Source: Adineta vaga (taxonomy: Eukaryota; Animalia; Rotifera). From it: DNA of 64,000 nt. Made by a program: the position numbers and the translations under genes. The stretch is from assembly GCA_021613535.1 (NCBI GenBank), contig CP075492.1:13516001-13580000 (forward strand), in the 5' to 3' direction. Positions 26,680 to 33,864 of the stretch are shown here, in pieces. How positions within the stretch are numbered: the first letter of the stretch is position 1; each line of letters begins with the position of its first letter. The notes under the pieces were generated by a model, which saw only the letters and a program-made list of their open reading frames with translations, searched no databases and was not told the origin of the DNA.

Positions 26680-26925
26680 TCAAACAAGATTATACAAATT
26701 TTCCAAGAATTGATCAAAAAGAATAGAAATATTCGAAATATTTTTTCTTTATGTCAATATAATATATCAGCGAATCCAGCTTGTTGACTCCTGTGATTCT
26801 TCTCTACACACAATAAAAATAAAAACAAACAACAATCACATATATTTAAGGATAAATCTCATTTTTTTTATTTCAATAAAGAATCGATTTTTTCAACAAG
26901 ATTTATAAATTCAAATTAGCAGTTT

Positions 26926-29900
26926 TTAATCTTCGATCATTTTATCTTCACAATCTTTTATTTTGTCAATTACTTCTTTCCAATAATCATCTGCAATACT
27001 ATTTTCTCGTAACATATTATCACGTTCTTCGAATTTATTTTGTGTTGATTCAGTTAAATTCCATCTTTCATCTGATGTATTCGATAGTTGTTGTTTGAAT
27101 AGGTCAAGTTTTGTCTCATCAGTTGATTCTATAAGACAAAAAGAAAAGAAAAGAAAAGAAAAGATTTCAAGCATCACATTCGTACCATTAACATATATCT
27201 GTTCTAATAATTGCCCTTCTGTATTGGATAATGGTATTTTACTACTTCGACGTAAAATTGTAAAACTAAATGCAGCTCCTTTGTTTGAATAGTTCATAAA
27301 ATGAATTGATTTGCCTTTATTTTTCATACGACAGAAATCATGTAGATTAACTGAATATTCATTTCGATCTTTGACAATATCTGGAGTTCCAGCATACATA
27401 TCGAAAGCTAAAGCAACGAATTGTTTTTCATAACATTTTAAAGGACGATCTAATAGAATTGTTTGAACACCTCGTTGACCTTGATAAATATGATTTGTTG
27501 GAAGTATGTATTCATCAACTACAAGAAATTTATTTGGATTATCTTTTTCATTTGCTAAAAGATAAAGAATAATCGAAGGATTGGATATTCGAGGAGGTGA
27601 ATGAAAATTAATTGTCACAGAATTGATAAAACCTTTTCGAAGAATACGATCAACACCATTGAAAACAACCATATTAAATAGATTTGAATCAATCTTCATG
27701 ATTTCATTATCATCATGAATACCATAAGTCGTTTCTAGAAGAAAAGAATTATCGTACTCATTCTTTGAAAGAAAAGATGGTCTTACTTAAAGTTTTCGGA
27801 AGATATCTTCTGATTAAAGTATACAATGGATAAGCAATATAAATAAAGACATTCAATGGTGGTGGTAAGAATGTTTTTTTATTATATTCTGTAACCAAAC
27901 GAAAACGATGATATGCCCAAGATTCATGTGCACTATCATGAACTTTTTGAATTGTTACACTAAATATCGAAGTATATTCTTTCATACCTTGCAATGAATT
28001 CGTATGACAAAAACTTACTTGAAAAGTGCAACTAATACATTAAGAAGTAAAAAACTTGCAACTGAAACGAAGAAGATCGTTAATAACAATGCTACGACTC
28101 CATATGCATCATCATCAACTAAAAACAACTATAGATGTAAACGATACGAGCATGTTCATTCAAATCTTACTTCCAACTTTTTCATTATTGAAATAATATG
28201 ACGTTTCTAACGTAATCTCTCCATATACTTTCCAAACACTCCAATCAAGAATATTTCTTATAATTCTCCAATTCCATAAATTCGAACCATTATTTAATAG
28301 ATCAAAATCGTCGGATGATTGCTGATGATCACTTTTACGTTTCCAATAAACTTGATGTTTTGTTGTAATCAATGCGAATGATGTAACTGAATAAGCAACC
28401 AAGAATACCATGATAAAATAGATGAAAAATAGTAGATCTTTCATCTAAATCTATCCAAATACAGACAATAAATATTGATAAATGAACACTTACAGTATTA
28501 AATATCATTAATAATTTCGGTCCAAGTCGTTCAAATGCAAAGAATACATGTAAAAGACGGATATACCACAGAAATAGATCAATACACATAGTTATTCTAA
28601 ACGAATGAAAAATTTTTTTTTTCTATCGTGAAATTTCCTACGAGATTACTTTGAAATCATAAAAGCTTGTTCTGTAGCAATAAATCTTGTTATAAATGCT
28701 ACAAGATAAATCAAACTCGCAACTAAATCCATAATATTCCATTTATCCTGTAGAAAATAATCTCGAACAATATGTCGACTTCCATTTTTCTGCTGTTCTT
28801 TCCAATGATGCACAAACTAAAAAGAAACATGAAGTGCAAGAAAATACATTTCAAAATTATTTACTTCATTTCCTTCCTCAAAAATTAAACTCCAAATAAG
28901 AATATGGAGAAAGATTTCTGCTGTTGGAATTGCCAAATTTTTATAACCACTACGTTGACCACCATTGTTATTGATGGGAAAATAATCAACTAGTAACACA
29001 TAACTGAATAAGGTAAGGAATAAGATATAAAATACCTGAAAGAAAAAAAGGACTACAATAAGATTATGTATTGATAAGATTAGTTACGATGTTATAGAAA
29101 AATCGAACGATTGCTCGACCACGATAGAATTCTTTGAATCTATAGATAATTCTTGCACTCCATCCAATCACATGACGTTTTTTTTCCCATGTACTGCAAT
29201 ACAAACAAGTAATATACATATATATCTAAGAAAATCATTTTAATTTACTTCAATTGTCTTTGATCTGATATAATGAATTTCGATAGAGCTTGGATAGGAA
29301 TTAAAATTGGTACAAAACACATAATAAAAATCTAAAAAGCAAGTAACAAATTTTGTATTCAATATGAAAACTTACTAAAGAACTAATCCAAAAGATTCGT
29401 TGATCATATTCATTCAAATAACCATACCATTGTTGATCAAGATATCGTTGAACAGTTTTTGTTGTTAAGAACGTTCGACTATTGATCTCTTGAGCAATTT
29501 GTAATGGATCTTTATTGAAATAGATTGGTGATTTTTTCGTTAAAATATTCAAAGCAAATTGTTCATTTTCAGCAAAACACATATCAATAATCATCGATGC
29601 ATGAGTTTCAAATTCTCTACAAGAAGATTTATTTTCTTTCTCAATTCGAAATCAAATTCACATACTTTTGTTTAGCAAAAAAATTAATTCGTTCTTCATG
29701 TTTAATTGTTAGTTGTGCTGCTTGATGATAAACTTTGCTTGCCAATAAAGCAGCTATAGTTGTATTCTATATAGTATAGATGTAAAATTGGATTTTCGAT
29801 GAATATCGATACTTACCGAAGATCTCGAACAGAGATATGTAACCATTTTATGATGTTTGAAAAACAATGACCAAAGGAATAGATCTCGGAAAAATGCTAT

Positions 29901-32888
29901 GAGAAATTGAAGAGAATAGAAACAAAAATGAATGTGTCTATTTACTTGGAACTGGATCAATGGTGAAACTAATGGCTACACCTAATTGACTGTTAACTTT
30001 AAATTGTATGGGTTGTTTTGCAGCAGTAGGTGATCGATTGATAATTTGATTAAGATTGATTGAATGTTGATTTCTTTGTGGTATAGCACATGGAAAACCG
30101 GTTTGAGGTGTAAATCCAATCGCAATATATTGTCCACTAGTCACAAATATTTGTTTTTCTATTGTTTTATATTGATGAATATCTGAGAATATAGTTGGTA
30201 CTAATCGTAGTTGACATTTATGAACGATTAAAAATGAATTGAGATCATCGGTTGGTGATATTAAATAACAAACAAGTGATCTGTTTGAAAGTAAAAGCTT
30301 TGTACTATCAAAACGAATTGAAATAGTATTTAGAAACCCATTGATTTGAATCATATCAATAGCATTAAAAACACAAACTGCATGTTCGAAATGACTTTCA
30401 AGATTTGTTGAGAGATTTTCATCATCAAGAAGACCATATTTTACAGCTAAATTAGAATTAAACTTAAAGAATTCGTTTACTAAATCAATCTTACTTGAAC
30501 TATCTCCCTTAAATGAAGAAAAAAAATAAAACAATATAGTTGATATTACTCTATTTTCAATCAACCGAAAAAAAAACAAGTTTTACCCAATTGAGTGAAA
30601 CATCTTGTGTAACATTCAAATAATCTTCATAAAAATATGTCTTATCAAATCTACTCCAATTAAATGATTCTTCTCTTCGATGCATATTTTCTAATATATG
30701 TTGAGAATAAGGTAATACATCTGTTTCCTAATCATAGATTCGAAAAAATCAATCATTTAAATAAAAATATCCTTTCGTTTGCTTACATCTTGATAAAGTT
30801 TTTCCAATAGATTCAATCGTGGTAATCTATCGAATGAAGCACCATATTCAATCAATAGATCAGCACAACGAATATTATTCATACGAATTGAATCACGTAA
30901 TGCTTGATCAAGTTCTAGATCCTAATTTTTGCCGAAAGATACAAATGATCATTATATTGAAGCATAATTACTTACTGTCCATTGAAAAATTGTTTTATCT
31001 GTAAGAATATTTCGTTGAATTCGATCGAATTTATTCCAAGCCATTGCTAATTTCAGTTCTGTAATTCGTTGTTTTCCTTCATTTTGAATTAATTTTGCTG
31101 CTAGAAGAAGATGAATCATTAATATCAAAACAGAGGAAGAAAAAACAACAACCAGATTACCATTGAAAAGAGCATGTAAAATTGCGTCATCTAATTTTTG
31201 TTCACCTTCTTCAGTGTAAAATTGAAAGATTAAAATAAGAAAATAACCTTCACGAGAAGTTAATTGTTGAATAAATTGTTCTAAATTTGTATGATTCAGA
31301 ACGGGATGATGTCTTGATGTTGAACGTAGTCGATTTGCACTAAAATATCAATGAAAATTTTCATTGTTTATTTGTATCTATTTAGTTTATCTCGATTTAC
31401 AAAGGTTCAAATTTTGATGAAGCTCGATTATATATTTCTAATGAACGTTGTTCACCATATTTAGTCGATTGATTTCCATATAAATATCGATATTCTCGTG
31501 CAATTTCATCTGCTGCACGACCAGTACCCTATTTAAATTAAAAACAAATCTCATTCAAGTAGATGTAAGTTCAATTTTACTTCAATAACAATGACAGGTG
31601 TTCCTTGTTGTAATGTATAACAAACGGTAAGAACTGACGAAGCTCCACCATTTGCTAATATTTGAACGATTGGAATATCATAAACTTAAATAATCGATTA
31701 AAAAAGAAAAAGAAAAAATGAACTTATTTTATGACATTGATTTACTTTCACTGATAGTATGTTCAATTTCAGTACGTGGTTTTATTGTTAAATCTGCTCG
31801 ACAATTAACACTTGTAGAAAATTCAGTTGGAATTGATTCGACATTTTCACCGAGCATATCATCGAGAAGAATAAAATGTGTGTGATTAGGATCAAGTGGA
31901 CAACTGTTTTCGTTTGATGACGGTGTTCGAATACGATAAACTTTTGGTGTTTGTTCAATTTGTATATTTTGCCATAGGGTTGTTTTCGATTGGAAATTTC
32001 GAGGTATATGAGTAAGAGTTGATGTGATACATTCAAAATTTGTATTATCAGAAGATAAAACATGTTCAAAAGATTTTAAACTAGTTGTCGGATGTACTGA
32101 AATAATGCTTGGTTCCGATAATTGCTTAGCGAGATATTGATGATCTTAATGAAAGGACTTCAAACAAACTCTATTCGATTGAATAAAATAACATCCTACC
32201 TGTTGTGTAGTACCAACTTCCAATACCAATACATTGCACTTTTGAAGGCGTTTTTGTATTTTTATATCGACGTTTATCAACAGCATCGCCAACTTCTTTC
32301 ATTACACCAGCATATGTTCCACCAGTAATAATCCATGCATCTGAAATTGCATGAAAAAGAATTAAGTGATATAAACTGTATATTTTTTTACCTGTTGTCA
32401 CAGCAGCAGCAATAAGGCCACGTTGAAATGCATTTCGTGCTCGTGGTGTTGATAATTTAAATAGATGTGCACCACCTGTGACAGAAATAATCAATTGTGG
32501 TGATGGTAATTTCCAACCATAACGCATTAGATTAACAACTGATTCGGCAAGTTTTTTGCTTCGTAGATGATTTTCATTAAATTCAGTAGTTGTTAAATGA
32601 TCATTTGAATCAATTCTTTCATAAAATTCTAATGAATCCAACTTTCGAAACAATGAAGAAAACGTTGCTTTAGAATCATTGATCATCGGTGTAAATGGTA
32701 CACGAATATACTAAATGTAGAAGAAATATATAACGATCAGTTAAATAACTCGTTAATGTACTTTTGAACGACGATCATTTTCAGCAAATAAAATATCACC
32801 AAAATCTTTGATTCTAAATGAAATTAAAGCTCAATCTTTTACAATGCTCAAAAAAAACCTACGGTAAATCCATATTTTCTGTATTCAT
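26926..32888 (-). CDS. TRPM-like cation channel (many exons) with a SLOG/LSDAT N-terminus and two copies of an extra domain
   Basis: FGDILF..KYIR, WKLPSPQLIISVTGGA, AWIITGGTYAGVMKEVG, LDPNHTHFILLD, GTPVIVI-GTGRAAD, RDLFLWS, DKWNIMD, WYIRLLHVF..LGPKLLMI, and the TRP box WAYHRF..FLPPPLN. Confidence 0.9.
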
Positions 32889-33350
32889 TATTATCAATGA
32901 AACTTCTACACTTATGGTCTGTATTGTCAAACTTCAACGAATGCAAAGAATTTGTTGAAATCATTTCTTGCAAAATATAATATTGAATCTAGATATCAAC
33001 ATCTTTCCGTTTTGTTCAGAGAGAAGTTTTTATGAATAATCGTTCTTTGGTGAGATGCGGAAGTCAAACAGATGAAGAAAAAATAATCTCTAACATGTAT
33101 ATCTTTCCACGGAAACGTCGCATTTCCTCACACAAGAAAGAACTATGTACTTTTATTTTATAAAATGATGATCGAGATCATACATGTATTCTGGTTCAGA
33201 GTGAAGATCATATATCTACCTTCCCACTCTTATCAATACCTAATTAAATTACTTCATTAACAAAACATGTATACTTTTATACGTTTTTATTTGTTAGATG
33301 ACAAAGTTAACATGTATCAATCAAAAAAAAAGATAAGCACGAATGTATCT

Positions 33351-33864
33351 TCATTTATGAAGTGCTTTTCTAATATTATTCAGAAATTCTTCTAATGATA
33401 GTTGTCCATCACCATTATCATCAAACATGTGACACATTTGTTGAAATGAAATACCCCATATACGTTCACCAGCTAACGTAATACCACGTTGTGCTTCTTG
33501 ATGTGATATAAATCCATCTTTATTTCTATCGACTTCATTGAATGCTTCTGTTAATTCAGCAATAACAAGAGGATTATCAAATGTACCCGTTTCTGCATGC
33601 ATAAATTCTTTAAAATGATCAAATGTAATCCATCCTGTATTACCACTTAATTGTCTAATATAAGTATCGATAGCTGCACTACGAAAACCTTGAAGAGATT
33701 CACTATCAAATACTAAACGTCGAAAATCTTCTGTTGAGATTCTTCCCGTTTTTTCTAGAAATAAAGAGATCAAATAGTTTATTTTAATCATAATTTAACT
33801 AACTTGTATCGATATTATTGAATTCTCGTTGAAGGTATTTGTCGTCTAAAGGGTACTTTGCCAT
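33351..33864 (-). CDS. Calmodulin-like EF-hand protein (2 exons)
   Basis: EF loops DTKKTGRISTED, DRNKDGFISHQE and DDNGDGQLSLEE. First exon MAKYPLDDKYLQREFNNIDT. Confidence 0.85.

What the first reader, a model, noticed from the sequence alone, without database searches (positions are those of the whole stretch)
27242..30507. TRPM-like channel with two copies of an unrecognised ~140-aa domain, one in place of the ligand-binding NUDT9-H tail
Seen: two segments of the channel align by eye. Copy 1 (~29960-30385, N-terminal cytosolic region just before RDLFLWS) reads VFNAIDMI..GFLNTISIRF..LVCYLI..NSFLIV..QYIAIGF..G.P....RNQHSINL..IQF....GVAISFTI. Copy 2 (~27255-27675, after the TRP box) reads VFNGVDRI..GFINSVTINF..IILYLL..NKFLVV..QFVALAF..G.P....RNEYSVNL..IHF....GAAFSFTI. 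Each copy sits in a single exon, and both exons end in a phase-1 intron four codons after SFTI, which points to exon duplication. Established: canonical TRPMs have no such insert, and TRPM2 carries NUDT9-H at the position of copy 2. Inference: a beta-rich sensor module may have been grafted twice onto the channel, giving a new gating mode.
Basis: partly seen in the sequence, partly recalled or inferred. Interest (0 to 1): 0.85.

Follow-up and report, generated by a model that had tools for sequence, protein, structure and literature searches.

The report
TRPM channel with twin lectin-like domains
A rotifer ion-channel gene of the TRPM family carries two copies of a folded beta-sandwich domain that no database names and no described TRPM channel has; bdelloid rotifers keep both copies, but what the domains do is untested.

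Summary
The minus-strand TRPM gene (about 32710 to 26926) has two single-exon segments, 29959-30441 and 27256-27732. They are 32% identical over 145 residues (BLASTP E 2e-15).

- **Fold:** both give confident all-beta models (pLDDT 91 and 96). Both have the same best structural match, the calcium-binding lectin-like domain of Cwp84 (Z 10.7 and 11.5). Phage tail domains, carbohydrate-binding modules and PHR domains follow.
- **Sequence family:** no match in Pfam or in PDB sequences. All named relatives come from bdelloid rotifers.
- **History:** a tree puts all N-side copies in one clade and all C-side copies in another, so one old duplication inside the gene is likely. A third clade lies outside TRPM genes.
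- **Selection:** dN/dS is 0.26 and 0.33 against orthologous metagenome contigs.
- **Position:** copy 1 sits just before the FFRDLFLWS helix. Copy 2 starts about 20 residues after the TRP region and precedes a conserved C-terminal helix, so it does not take the place of NUDT9-H.
- **RNA:** support is thin. One spliced pore-region contig and one contig over copy 2; none over copy 1.

The sensor role is inference. I class this as a new variant of a known kind. Earlier scan notes report other unusual TRPM genes in this genome, but not this domain.

The parts
32200..32710 (-). Two exons (32710-32392 and 32340-32200, with a 51-nt intron between) that encode the start of the SLOG / MHR1-2 region of the TRPM channel.
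   Evidence: Pfam PF18139 LSDAT_euk, E 1.1e-21. Splice sites were read from the sequence. tblastn to bdelloid TRPM proteins.
30587..31347 (-). MHR3-region exons (LKLAMAWNKFDRIQ..., LIEYGASFDRL..., ...DVSLNW). The last one ends at 30587, before the 79-nt intron that precedes copy 1.
   Evidence: tblastn of P0004 residues 311-444 and P0070 residues 335-473. P0004 aligns here to Nematostella TRPM2 up to about residue 495. Donor and acceptor read.
29946..30507 (-). Copy 1 exon (187 codons plus 1 base; acceptor phase 0, donor phase 1).
   Evidence: Open frame and splice sites. Best-but-one match in the genome to the family profile, E 2.1e-44.
29959..30441 (-). Copy 1 domain (N-type), from KYGLLDD to SFTI: a beta-sandwich of about 160 residues.
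   Evidence: BLASTP to copy 2, E 2e-15. AlphaFold2 pLDDT 91.3, pTM 0.88, all-beta. Cwp84 lectin-like domain Z 10.7, rmsd 3.0 over 138 residues. dN/dS 0.26 against L009.
29897..29945 (-). 49-nt phase-1 intron after copy 1.
   Evidence: GT..AG, with frame continuity into (T)FFRDLFLWS. An intron at the same place and phase occurs in the orthologous contig L009.
29817..29896 (-). Exon encoding (T)FFRDLFLWSLFFKHHKMVTYLCSRSS, the first helix after the insert (start of the MHR4 region).
   Evidence: Sequence. The equivalent P0004 segment aligns to 'LDVFLWAV' of Nematostella TRPM2 and 'RDLFLWAV' of TRPM5.
28019..29083 (-). Transmembrane exons S1-S6. They hold S3 'DKWNIMD', the pore 'VWKVYGE', and S6 'LLLNVLVALF'.
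   Evidence: Frame translations. tblastn to P0014, P0070 and P0004. The P0004 S5-TRP stretch aligns to Nematostella TRPM2 residues 1019-1128.
28445..28493 (-). 49-nt intron that is spliced out in an RNA-type contig.
   Evidence: Run X1, record 2, joins 28444 to 28494; the skipped ends CT..AC are GT..AG on the minus strand.
27787..27959 (-). TRP-helix exon (VTIQKVHDSAHESWAYHRFRLVTEYNKKTFLPPPLNVF...).
   Evidence: phmmer to zebrafish TRPM2 residues 1067-1111, E 0.0027. Splice sites.
27243..27734 (-). Copy 2 exon (phase 1 to phase 1) if the first donor (27243|27242) is used. It runs on to 27186 if the second donor is used.
   Evidence: Sequence. Best match in the genome to the family profile, E 3e-48. 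RNA-type contig 27223-27377.
27256..27732 (-). Copy 2 domain (C-type), from TTYGIHDD to SFTI.
   Evidence: AlphaFold2 pLDDT 96.3, pTM 0.91. Cwp84 lectin-like domain Z 11.5, rmsd 2.6 over 135 residues. dN/dS 0.33 against L008.
27186..27242 (-). 57-nt in-frame stretch that is either coding (19 codons) or the first part of a 114-nt intron. The second donor, AATG|GTACGA, sits at its end.
   Evidence: Both donors are phase 1. The second aligns with ATG|GTAC in L008. The X1 contig runs 20 nt into this stretch.
26926..27128 (-). Last exon, including the stop codon (26926-26928). It holds a conserved helix-like motif, F..RDNMLRE.SIA.DYW..I..IK, at about 26956-27033.
   Evidence: Alignment of 15 family tails. 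This is the most conserved DNA stretch between the window and L008. No PDB sequence match.

Best explanation
**What it is.** This is an intact, transcribed TRPM-type cation channel gene of a bdelloid rotifer. Two paralogous beta-sandwich domains of about 160 residues have been built into its cytosolic parts.

**What is shown:**
- The domain is a bdelloid-restricted sequence family with a galactose-binding-domain-like (lectin-like) fold.
- It occurs in non-channel proteins, singly or in tandem, and in one TRPM subfamily.
- In that subfamily, an N-type copy sits between the MHR3 region and the 'DLFLWS' helix. A C-type copy sits between the TRP region and a conserved C-terminal helix.
- The N-type and C-type copies are each monophyletic. 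One capture followed by one duplication inside the gene, before the sampled bdelloid genera split, is therefore the simplest history.
- Both copies are under purifying selection.

**What is inferred:**
- Copy 1 ends only about 6 residues before the DLFLWS helix. The conserved YG strand of copy 2 begins about 20 residues after the PPPLNVF stretch that follows the TRP helix.
- With tethers this short, I think both domains are rigidly coupled regulatory modules.
- They would bind a cytosolic ligand, ion, lipid or partner protein and pass that on to the TRP helix and gate, much as appended or inserted domains do in TRPM2 and other TRPM channels.
For: **Real and homologous:**
- BLASTP E 2e-15.
- Profile matches at E 3e-48 and 2e-44, against 2.6e-18 or weaker for the other five places in the genome.

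**Folded domains:**
- pLDDT 91.3 and 96.3.
- The two models independently give the same top structural match, Cwp84 lectin-like domain (Z 10.7 and 11.5). The same following set appears for both: phage tail and baseplate proteins, a PBCV-1 capsid protein, AcXE carbohydrate-binding module, PHR, CBM32/discoidin and IFT25.

**Part of a TRPM gene:**
- SLOG domain, E 1.1e-21.
- TRP exon matches TRPM2 residues 1067-1111.
- The orthologue P0004 matches Nematostella TRPM2 at E 1.7e-39, with both inserts unaligned.
- Splice phases are consistent.
- The spliced RNA contig and the contig over copy 2.
- The metagenome contig L009 carries MHR3 exons, copy 1, the same intron, and the FFRDLFFWS exon.

**Conserved:**
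- Gene models with both copies exist in Rotaria magnacalcarata and R. sordida. Single-copy fragments exist in Didymodactylos and Adineta steineri.
- dN/dS is 0.26 and 0.33.

**Duplication history:**
- The tree gives a TRPM clade (SH-aLRT 95). It splits into a C-type clade (93) with all 17 C-labelled rows and an N-type clade (91) with all 12 N-labelled rows. A separate non-TRPM clade has support 95.

**Not described:**
- No Pfam or PDB sequence match.
- No paper links TRPM with bdelloids.

**Cytosolic relatives act as binding modules:** the Cwp84 paper lists PHR, XRCC1-N and IFT25 as structural neighbours and reports a bound calcium ion (PMC4089489).
Against: - No functional data exist, and no ligand is indicated.
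- The nearly invariant residues are mostly core phenylalanines plus one Asp and one Gly, so no binding site can be named.
- I could not inspect model coordinates.
- RNA evidence does not cover copy 1, and expression looks low.
- Public gene models of the family are fragmentary. P0004 and P0026 lack transmembrane segments.
- The fold class is very common and says little about function.
- The tree supports (91-95 SH-aLRT, quick search) are good but not decisive.
Confidence: 0.55

Rival explanations
1. The two domains are structural only. They form an extra cytosolic ring or subunit interface that helps the tetramer assemble, perhaps making up for the very short C-terminal tail of this gene. They sense nothing.
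For: - The protein ends 9 residues after the conserved C-terminal motif (K57 of 66 in the last exon), and no coiled-coil-length tail follows in this gene.
- Conserved positions are mainly core residues.
- Beta-sandwich domains of this class often serve as scaffolds in phage tails and capsids.
Against: - Other family members do have long helical tails after the motif yet keep both domains, for example P0026 and P0060.
- Non-channel members of the family exist as free or tandem domains, which fits a binding module better.
Confidence: 0.22
2. The domains are recognition modules of an immune-type sensor channel. In this view bdelloids have diversified TRPM/SLOG channels as effectors, and the lectin-like domains recognise a foreign or danger-related molecule.
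For: - The genome holds many TRPM/SLOG genes: 64 exon-level matches.
- Earlier scan notes report TRPM genes fused to long LRR arrays or paired with TIR genes (I did not check these).
- The closest structural matches include phage receptor-binding and tail-tip proteins and a bacterial surface lectin-like domain.
- The non-TRPM paralogues look like surface proteins, with a membrane-anchor-like stretch and Thr/Ser-rich stretches.
Against: - There is only one such gene in this genome.
- Both copies show moderate purifying selection rather than the diversifying pattern expected of recognition domains.
- Both copies sit on cytosolic parts of the channel.
- Nothing here links the gene to infection.
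Confidence: 0.13
3. The segments are not part of the mature channel. They would be retained pseudo-exons, a nested gene, or gene-model artefacts.
For: - No RNA contig covers copy 1, and the contig over copy 2 is colinear with the genome, so it could be pre-mRNA or DNA carry-over.
- Public protein models are automated predictions.
Against: - Skipping copy 1 (phase 0 in, phase 1 out) would shift the frame of the downstream MHR4 and transmembrane exons.
- Both exons are open, with dN/dS 0.26-0.33.
- Placement and intron phase are the same in an independent environmental contig and across three genera.
Confidence: 0.04
4. The segments are diverged versions of a domain already known in TRPM channels, such as NUDT9-H or a piece of the MHR region.
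For: Copy 2 lies in the C-terminal cytosolic part, where TRPM2 and TRPM6/7 carry extra domains (from my own knowledge).
Against: - The models are all-beta jelly-roll sandwiches, and no Nudix or TRPM chain appears among the structural matches.
- No Pfam NUDIX or TRPM family hit on either exon at E up to 1.
- Alignments of the orthologue to 60 TRPM structures leave both segments unmatched.
Confidence: 0.02

Closest known systems
TRPM2 (including Nematostella TRPM2, PDB 6co7)
   Same: - It shares the SLOG/MHR N-terminus, the six-transmembrane core, the TRP helix and an S3 'WN..D' motif.
- It is the best solved-structure match of the orthologue P0004 (E 1.7e-39), and the window's TRP exon matches zebrafish TRPM2.
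- It also carries an extra cytosolic domain that controls gating (from my own knowledge).
   Different: - TRPM2's extra domain is a Nudix-fold NUDT9-H at the far C-terminus.
- Here there are two beta-sandwich domains: one inside the N-terminal region and one directly after the TRP region.
- No Nudix match was found.
Lectin-like domain of Clostridioides difficile Cwp84 (PDB 4ci7; Pfam PF18560)
   Same: - It is the best structural match of both copies: Z 10.7 (rmsd 3.0 over 138 residues) and Z 11.5 (rmsd 2.6 over 135 residues).
- It is the same beta-sandwich class.
- The protein language-model search also listed this Pfam family as a near cluster, score 0.88.
   Different: - Sequence identity is only 9-11%, and there is no Pfam match.
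- Cwp84's domain is extracellular, bacterial and calcium-bound, and its own function is unknown (PMC4089489).
- Whether the calcium ligands are kept here was not tested.
PHR domains (MYCBP2 and BTBD2; PDB 3gbw, 3hwj, 3no8) and IFT25
   Same: They are cytosolic animal members of the same fold class and act as protein-binding modules. Z is 6.0-7.5 for PHR and 6.4-6.7 for IFT25. PHR was also a near cluster in the language-model search.
   Different: The Z scores are in the range the tool itself calls common for unrelated beta-sandwiches. There is no sequence match, and these domains are not known in ion channels.
TRPM6 and TRPM7 channel-kinases, and the bdelloid TRPM-LRR fusions noted by this scan
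   Same: They are TRPM channels that have gained a foreign cytosolic domain.
   Different: There the added domain is a single C-terminal appendage (an alpha-kinase, from my own knowledge; LRR arrays according to earlier scan notes, which I did not check). Here it is a duplicated domain inserted at two internal sites.

Membership tests
TRPM channel family | N-terminal SLOG / MHR1-2 homology region | tested here: met
   PF18139 LSDAT_euk, E 1.1e-21, 77.9 bits against a cut-off of 25.7, on window 32174-32686.
TRPM channel family | TRP helix directly after S6 | tested here: met
   The exon 27790-27958 aligns to zebrafish TRPM2 residues 1067-1111, E 0.0027, including W.YHRF.L..EY and PPP.
TRPM channel family | Six-transmembrane core with pore helix and S6 gate | tested here: met
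   - Open exons at 29083-28019 hold the S3 'DKWNIMD', pore 'VWKVYGE' and S6 'LLLNVLVALF' motifs.
- They match the transmembrane parts of bdelloid TRPM proteins.
- The orthologue's S5-TRP stretch aligns to Nematostella TRPM2, E 7e-11.
- One S3-S4 exon alone gave no PDB match.
TRPM channel family | C-terminal rib helix and coiled-coil pole helix | tested here: inconclusive
   A conserved helix-like motif follows copy 2, but its profile matches no TRPM chain. In this gene the protein ends 9 residues after the motif.
TRPM2 subtype (NUDT9-H-bearing) | C-terminal Nudix-fold NUDT9-H domain | tested here: not met
   No Pfam family at E up to 1 on the whole C-terminal open frame 26929-27699. The copy 2 model is an all-beta sandwich.
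Cwp84-type lectin-like domain (PF18560) | Same beta-sandwich fold | tested here: met
   It is the top match for both models: Z 10.7 and 11.5 over 135-138 residues. Foldseek alone gave only weak rows, E 3.5e-3 or higher.
Cwp84-type lectin-like domain (PF18560) | Sequence match to the family model | tested here: not met
   None of the 50 aligned family members hits PF18560 at E up to 1.
Cwp84-type lectin-like domain (PF18560) | Bound calcium ion and its ligands | not testable with these tools
   The tools give no residue-level structural alignment and no model coordinates. The ligands are named in PMC4089489.
PHR domain (PF08005) | Sequence match to the family model | tested here: not met
   No hit. 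The only link is fold similarity, Z 6.0-7.5.

The most novel reading that the evidence does not exclude
The paired beta-sandwich domains form a new ligand-, calcium- or lipid-sensing unit that gates a TRPM channel through the TRP helix. That would be a gating mode with no counterpart in described TRP channels. It would have been built in bdelloid rotifers from a lineage-specific lectin-like domain that was captured from non-channel proteins and then duplicated within the gene.
Probability: 0.25. Interest if true: 0.75.

Novelty: new variant of a known kind. Interest (0 to 1): 0.55.

Why it matters
TRPM channels differ mainly in which cytosolic domain controls the gate: a Nudix domain in TRPM2, a kinase in TRPM6 and TRPM7, and ligand sites in the MHR region.

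This gene would be a natural example of a different solution. A lectin-like beta-sandwich has been inserted twice, at two sites next to the parts that move during gating.

If the domains bind something, they define a new input to a TRP channel. They would also show that these two loops tolerate whole-domain insertions, which is useful for channel engineering. They also define a domain family that has no Pfam model and, as far as these searches reach, occurs only in bdelloid rotifers.

If the domains are only scaffolds, the finding is a modest case of lineage-specific domain gain.

Tried and rejected
- **Do the two copies bind each other?** Complex prediction with copy 1 against copy 2 returned 'no answer' (ipSAE 0.00 in both runs, controls not folded). 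This counts neither for nor against binding.
- **Foldseek against the PDB:** only weak jelly-roll rows, E 3.5e-3 or higher, TM 0.5 or lower. The wider aligner was needed.
- **C-terminal tail:** a profile of the conserved tail against PDB sequences gave no TRPM match. My reading of that motif as the rib helix stays a guess from memory.
- **One transmembrane exon alone:** the S3-S4 exon gave no PDB match.
- **Non-TRPM paralogues:** Pfam found nothing on them (L003-L007). My impression that their neighbouring repeats resemble bacterial pre-peptidase C-terminal domains is unsupported, so I dropped it.
- **Origin by transfer from bacteria or phages:** I considered this because of the structural neighbours. 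No non-bdelloid sequence relative appeared among 1.8 billion representatives or in the second search. The only outsider, a fish rab44 protein at E 8.5e-4 with five short stretches, looks spurious.
- **Sponge and ribbon-worm look-alikes:** clusters came up by language-model features (0.95-0.96) and by shape (TM 0.70). They have no sequence-level support and could not be fetched.
- **A second TRPM paralogue with the domain in this genome:** I searched with the Adineta steineri protein and found none.
- **The 5' end of the gene:** it could not be closed with simple GT-AG choices.
- All searches used single exons by reference or database orthologues, so no full-length model or tetramer prediction was made.

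Full report
**Where and what.** The window is AT-rich eukaryotic DNA, about 30% G+C. It lies at C3:13516001-13580000 of a 100.8-Mb assembly in six contigs. Every named relative of the proteins studied here comes from bdelloid rotifers: Rotaria, Didymodactylos and Adineta. I did not test that.

**The gene.** A multi-exon TRPM-type channel gene runs on the minus strand from about 32710 to the stop codon at 26926-26928.
- Its first clear exons match the TRPM SLOG domain (PF18139, E 1.1e-21).
- The frame translations show the expected order: MHR3-like exons, the 'RDLFLWS' helix, S1-S6 with S3 'DKWNIMD', pore 'VWKVYGE' and S6 'LLLNVLVALF', then a TRP helix 'WAYHRFRLVTEY' followed by 'PPPLNVF'.
- The TRP exon alone matches zebrafish TRPM2 residues 1067-1111 (E 0.0027).
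- The Rotaria magnacalcarata orthologue P0004 matches Nematostella TRPM2 at E 1.7e-39, and some 60 other TRPM chains.
- I found no frameshift or in-frame stop in the exon chain as read from the frame translations and splice sites.
- The 5' end, the link between a probable ATG near 32961 and the 'YIRVPF' exon, remains unresolved.

**The observation.** The two segments are real and homologous.
- BLASTP of the two open frames gives 32% identity over 145 residues, E 2e-15.
A 'YG.LDD' strand about 20 residues before 'VFN..D.I' is conserved across the family and is a beta-strand in the models.
- The domain is therefore about 160 residues: 29959-30441 for copy 1 and 27256-27732 for copy 2.

**Exon structure.**
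- Copy 1 lies in one exon, 30507-29946, with a phase-0 acceptor.
- Its donor is phase 1, four codons after SFTI.
- The 49-nt intron then joins in frame to (T)FFRDLFLWS.
- Copy 2 lies in one exon that starts at 27734 in phase 1.
- A second phase-1 donor lies 57 nt further on, at 27186|27185. It would give a 57-nt intron and aligns with 'ATG|GTAC' in the orthologous contig L008.
- The 3' boundary of copy 2 is therefore open. The 5' phases of the two exons differ (0 against 1), so exon duplication is only partly mirrored in today's exon structure.

**RNA evidence.** One search for runs and one laying of contigs were allowed.
- A run guessed to be RNA (X1) has low-depth contigs on the gene.
- One contig joins 28444 to 28494 and skips 49 nt with GT..AG ends on the minus strand, so the gene is transcribed and spliced.
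- Another contig covers 27223-27377, inside copy 2, and runs 20 nt past the first candidate donor without a joint.
- No RNA-type contig covers copy 1.
- A DNA run covers everything.
- Inclusion of copy 1 in the transcript therefore rests on indirect evidence, set out next.

**Indirect evidence that both exons are coding parts of the channel.**
- Skipping copy 1 would shift the downstream frame.
- Two environmental contigs from related bdelloids carry the orthologous exons.
- L009 holds MHR3 exons, copy 1, a 52-nt intron at the same place and phase, and the start of 'FFRDLFFWS'.
- L008 holds copy 2 and the conserved tail.
- Nei-Gojobori estimates give dN 0.27 and dS 1.05 for copy 1 (ratio 0.26), and dN 0.32 and dS 0.97 for copy 2 (ratio 0.33). 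dS is near saturation, so the ratios are rough, but the constraint is clear.
- Gene models from R. magnacalcarata (P0004, P0026) and R. sordida (P0014, P0052) contain both copies around TRPM parts.
- Models from Didymodactylos and A. steineri contain one copy next to MHR or TRP parts.
- Many of these models are incomplete. P0004 and P0026, for example, lack transmembrane segments.

**What the domain is.**
- By sequence it is unnamed. There is no Pfam family at E up to 1 for either exon or for any of 50 aligned members, and no PDB sequence match.
- A two-sequence profile scored against 1.84 billion representative proteins found 62 hits.
- Every hit whose source I looked up was a bdelloid protein or an unnamed metagenome sequence.
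- The one exception was a fish rab44 protein at E 8.5e-4, which looks spurious.
- A 50-sequence profile search found nothing new outside that set.
- By structure it is not a new fold. AlphaFold2 with the family alignment gives all-beta models with pLDDT 91.3 (pTM 0.88) for copy 1 and 96.3 (pTM 0.91) for copy 2.
- Foldseek gave only weak rows.
- The next matches were phage Bxb1 tail tip and phi812 baseplate proteins, a PBCV-1 capsid protein, and the carbohydrate-binding modules of acetyl-xylan and polyvinyl-alcohol esterases (Z 7.7-11.1).
- PHR domains followed (Z 6.0-7.5), then CBM32, discoidin, neuropilin b1 and IFT25 (Z about 5-7).
- The Cwp84 paper describes that domain as a calcium-binding beta-sandwich of unknown function, whose neighbours include both sugar-binding modules and cytosolic protein-binding domains: PHR, XRCC1-N and IFT25 (PMC4089489).
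- I therefore place the fold in the galactose-binding-domain-like class. I treat membership of any named sequence family as not met.

**History of the domain.**
- In this genome the profile finds seven places: the two exons here and five elsewhere (L003-L007).
- None of the five lies beside TRPM-like frames in the 3.5 kb fetched.
- Two of them follow a membrane-anchor-like stretch and Thr/Ser-rich stretches.
- Didymodactylos has proteins made of two or three tandem copies only.
- A maximum-likelihood tree of 83 domain instances separates a non-TRPM clade (17 rows, SH-aLRT 95) from a TRPM clade (66 rows, 95).
- The TRPM clade splits into a clade holding all 17 rows I could label C-type (93) and a clade holding all 12 rows labelled N-type (91).
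- P0004's two domains group with the window's copy 1 and copy 2 respectively (nearest rows and starred sets), which identifies it as the orthologue.
- The simplest reading is one capture of the domain by a TRPM gene and one duplication inside the gene, both before the sampled bdelloid genera diverged. Expansion of that TRPM subfamily in Rotaria and Didymodactylos followed.
- This genome has many TRPM/SLOG genes (64 exon-level matches), but only this one carries the domain.

**Where the inserts sit.**
- In the alignment of P0004 to Nematostella TRPM2, the region up to about residue 495 (end of the MHR3 part) and the region from 'LDVFLWAV' onward are matched. Copy 1 fills the gap between them.
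- In the window, only 'DPVPTFF' separates the last strand of copy 1 from 'RDLFLWS'.
- The conserved 'YG' strand of copy 2 begins about 20 residues after 'PPPLNVF'.
- After copy 2 comes a variable linker and then the best-conserved stretch of the tail, 'F..RDNMLRE.SIA.DYW..I..IK'.
- From memory this motif resembles the TRPM rib helix, but its profile matches no solved TRPM chain, so I leave that as a guess.
- The protein ends 9 residues after the motif, and no long coiled-coil tail is present in this gene.
- Copy 2 is therefore an insertion between the TRP region and the C-terminal helix, not a replacement of NUDT9-H. No Nudix signal exists.

**How it most likely works.**
- Shown: two folded, conserved, selected domains sit at two fixed internal cytosolic sites of a TRPM channel.
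- Inferred: because the tethers to the MHR4 helix and to the TRP region are short, the domains are probably fixed parts of the cytosolic assembly, next to the elements that move on gating.
- Because free and tandem versions of the domain exist, and the fold class is typically a binding module, I think the most likely role is regulatory binding of a ligand, ion, lipid or partner protein that biases the gate.
- I give the whole statement 0.55. The anatomy and history alone deserve about 0.9, and the regulatory role about 0.35-0.4.
- The rivals are a purely structural role (0.22), an immune-type recognition role suggested by other unusual TRPM genes noted in this genome (0.13; earlier notes, unchecked), an artefact of annotation (0.04), and a diverged known TRPM domain (0.02).
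- A test of whether the two copies bind each other gave no verdict.

**Novelty and score.**
- I found no paper that links TRPM channels with bdelloid rotifers, and the public records carry no annotation for these segments.
- The channel is a known kind and the fold is a known class. The new elements are the sequence family and its double insertion into a TRPM channel.
- I rate it a new variant of a known kind, with interest 0.55. It is well documented and conserved, but has no functional lead yet.

**Rule-related notes.** Searches used single exons by reference or database orthologues.

Noticed in passing
window 33354-33794 (-): A 147-residue open frame with two EF-hand-like loops (DRNKDGFISHQE and DDNGDGQLSLEE) ends about 390 nt upstream of the probable start of the TRPM gene, on the same strand. 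A calcium-binding neighbour of a TRPM channel may be worth a look.
   Followed up: no
L003 (G000:C3:9168290-9168760, -) and L005 (G000:C3:9215999-9216469, +): Two paralogous genes 48 kb apart carry one copy of the domain. It comes after a membrane-anchor-like stretch, a Thr/Ser-rich stretch and another beta-rich open frame. No Pfam match. They look like surface proteins and belong to the non-TRPM side of the family.
   Followed up: partly
L004 (G000:C3:3740567-3741001, +): A divergent copy of the domain follows two repeats of a unit of about 190 residues (YGYLYANNISASDLSLNLLTSDDDGAGNMQFRF...). It resembles the 151-157-residue metagenome proteins P0055 and P0059, so those are probably rotifer sequences in environmental samples.
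   Followed up: partly
L006 (G000:C1:4187693-4188106, -): Two weakly matching copies of the domain lie about 0.9 kb apart, next to a seven-transmembrane-like open frame.
   Followed up: no
window 32711-32990 (-): The 5' end of the TRPM gene is unresolved. A mini-exon ending at 32762 (..FAENDRRSK) and the acceptor before YIRVPF at 32710 are clear and match orthologues. The link to the ATG near 32961 does not close in frame with an obvious GT-AG pair.
   Followed up: partly
window 26850-32800: A 2013 DNA run of the same species label differs from the window at about 1% of positions. This includes amino-acid changes in both domain exons: A>V, H>Y and I>T in copy 1, and I>L and M>T in copy 2. This is allelic or strain variation.
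   Followed up: partly
P0086 and P0087 (Rotaria sordida proteins): These gene models join a C-type copy of the domain to tetratricopeptide repeats. They may be a real fusion or a merged gene model.
   Followed up: no
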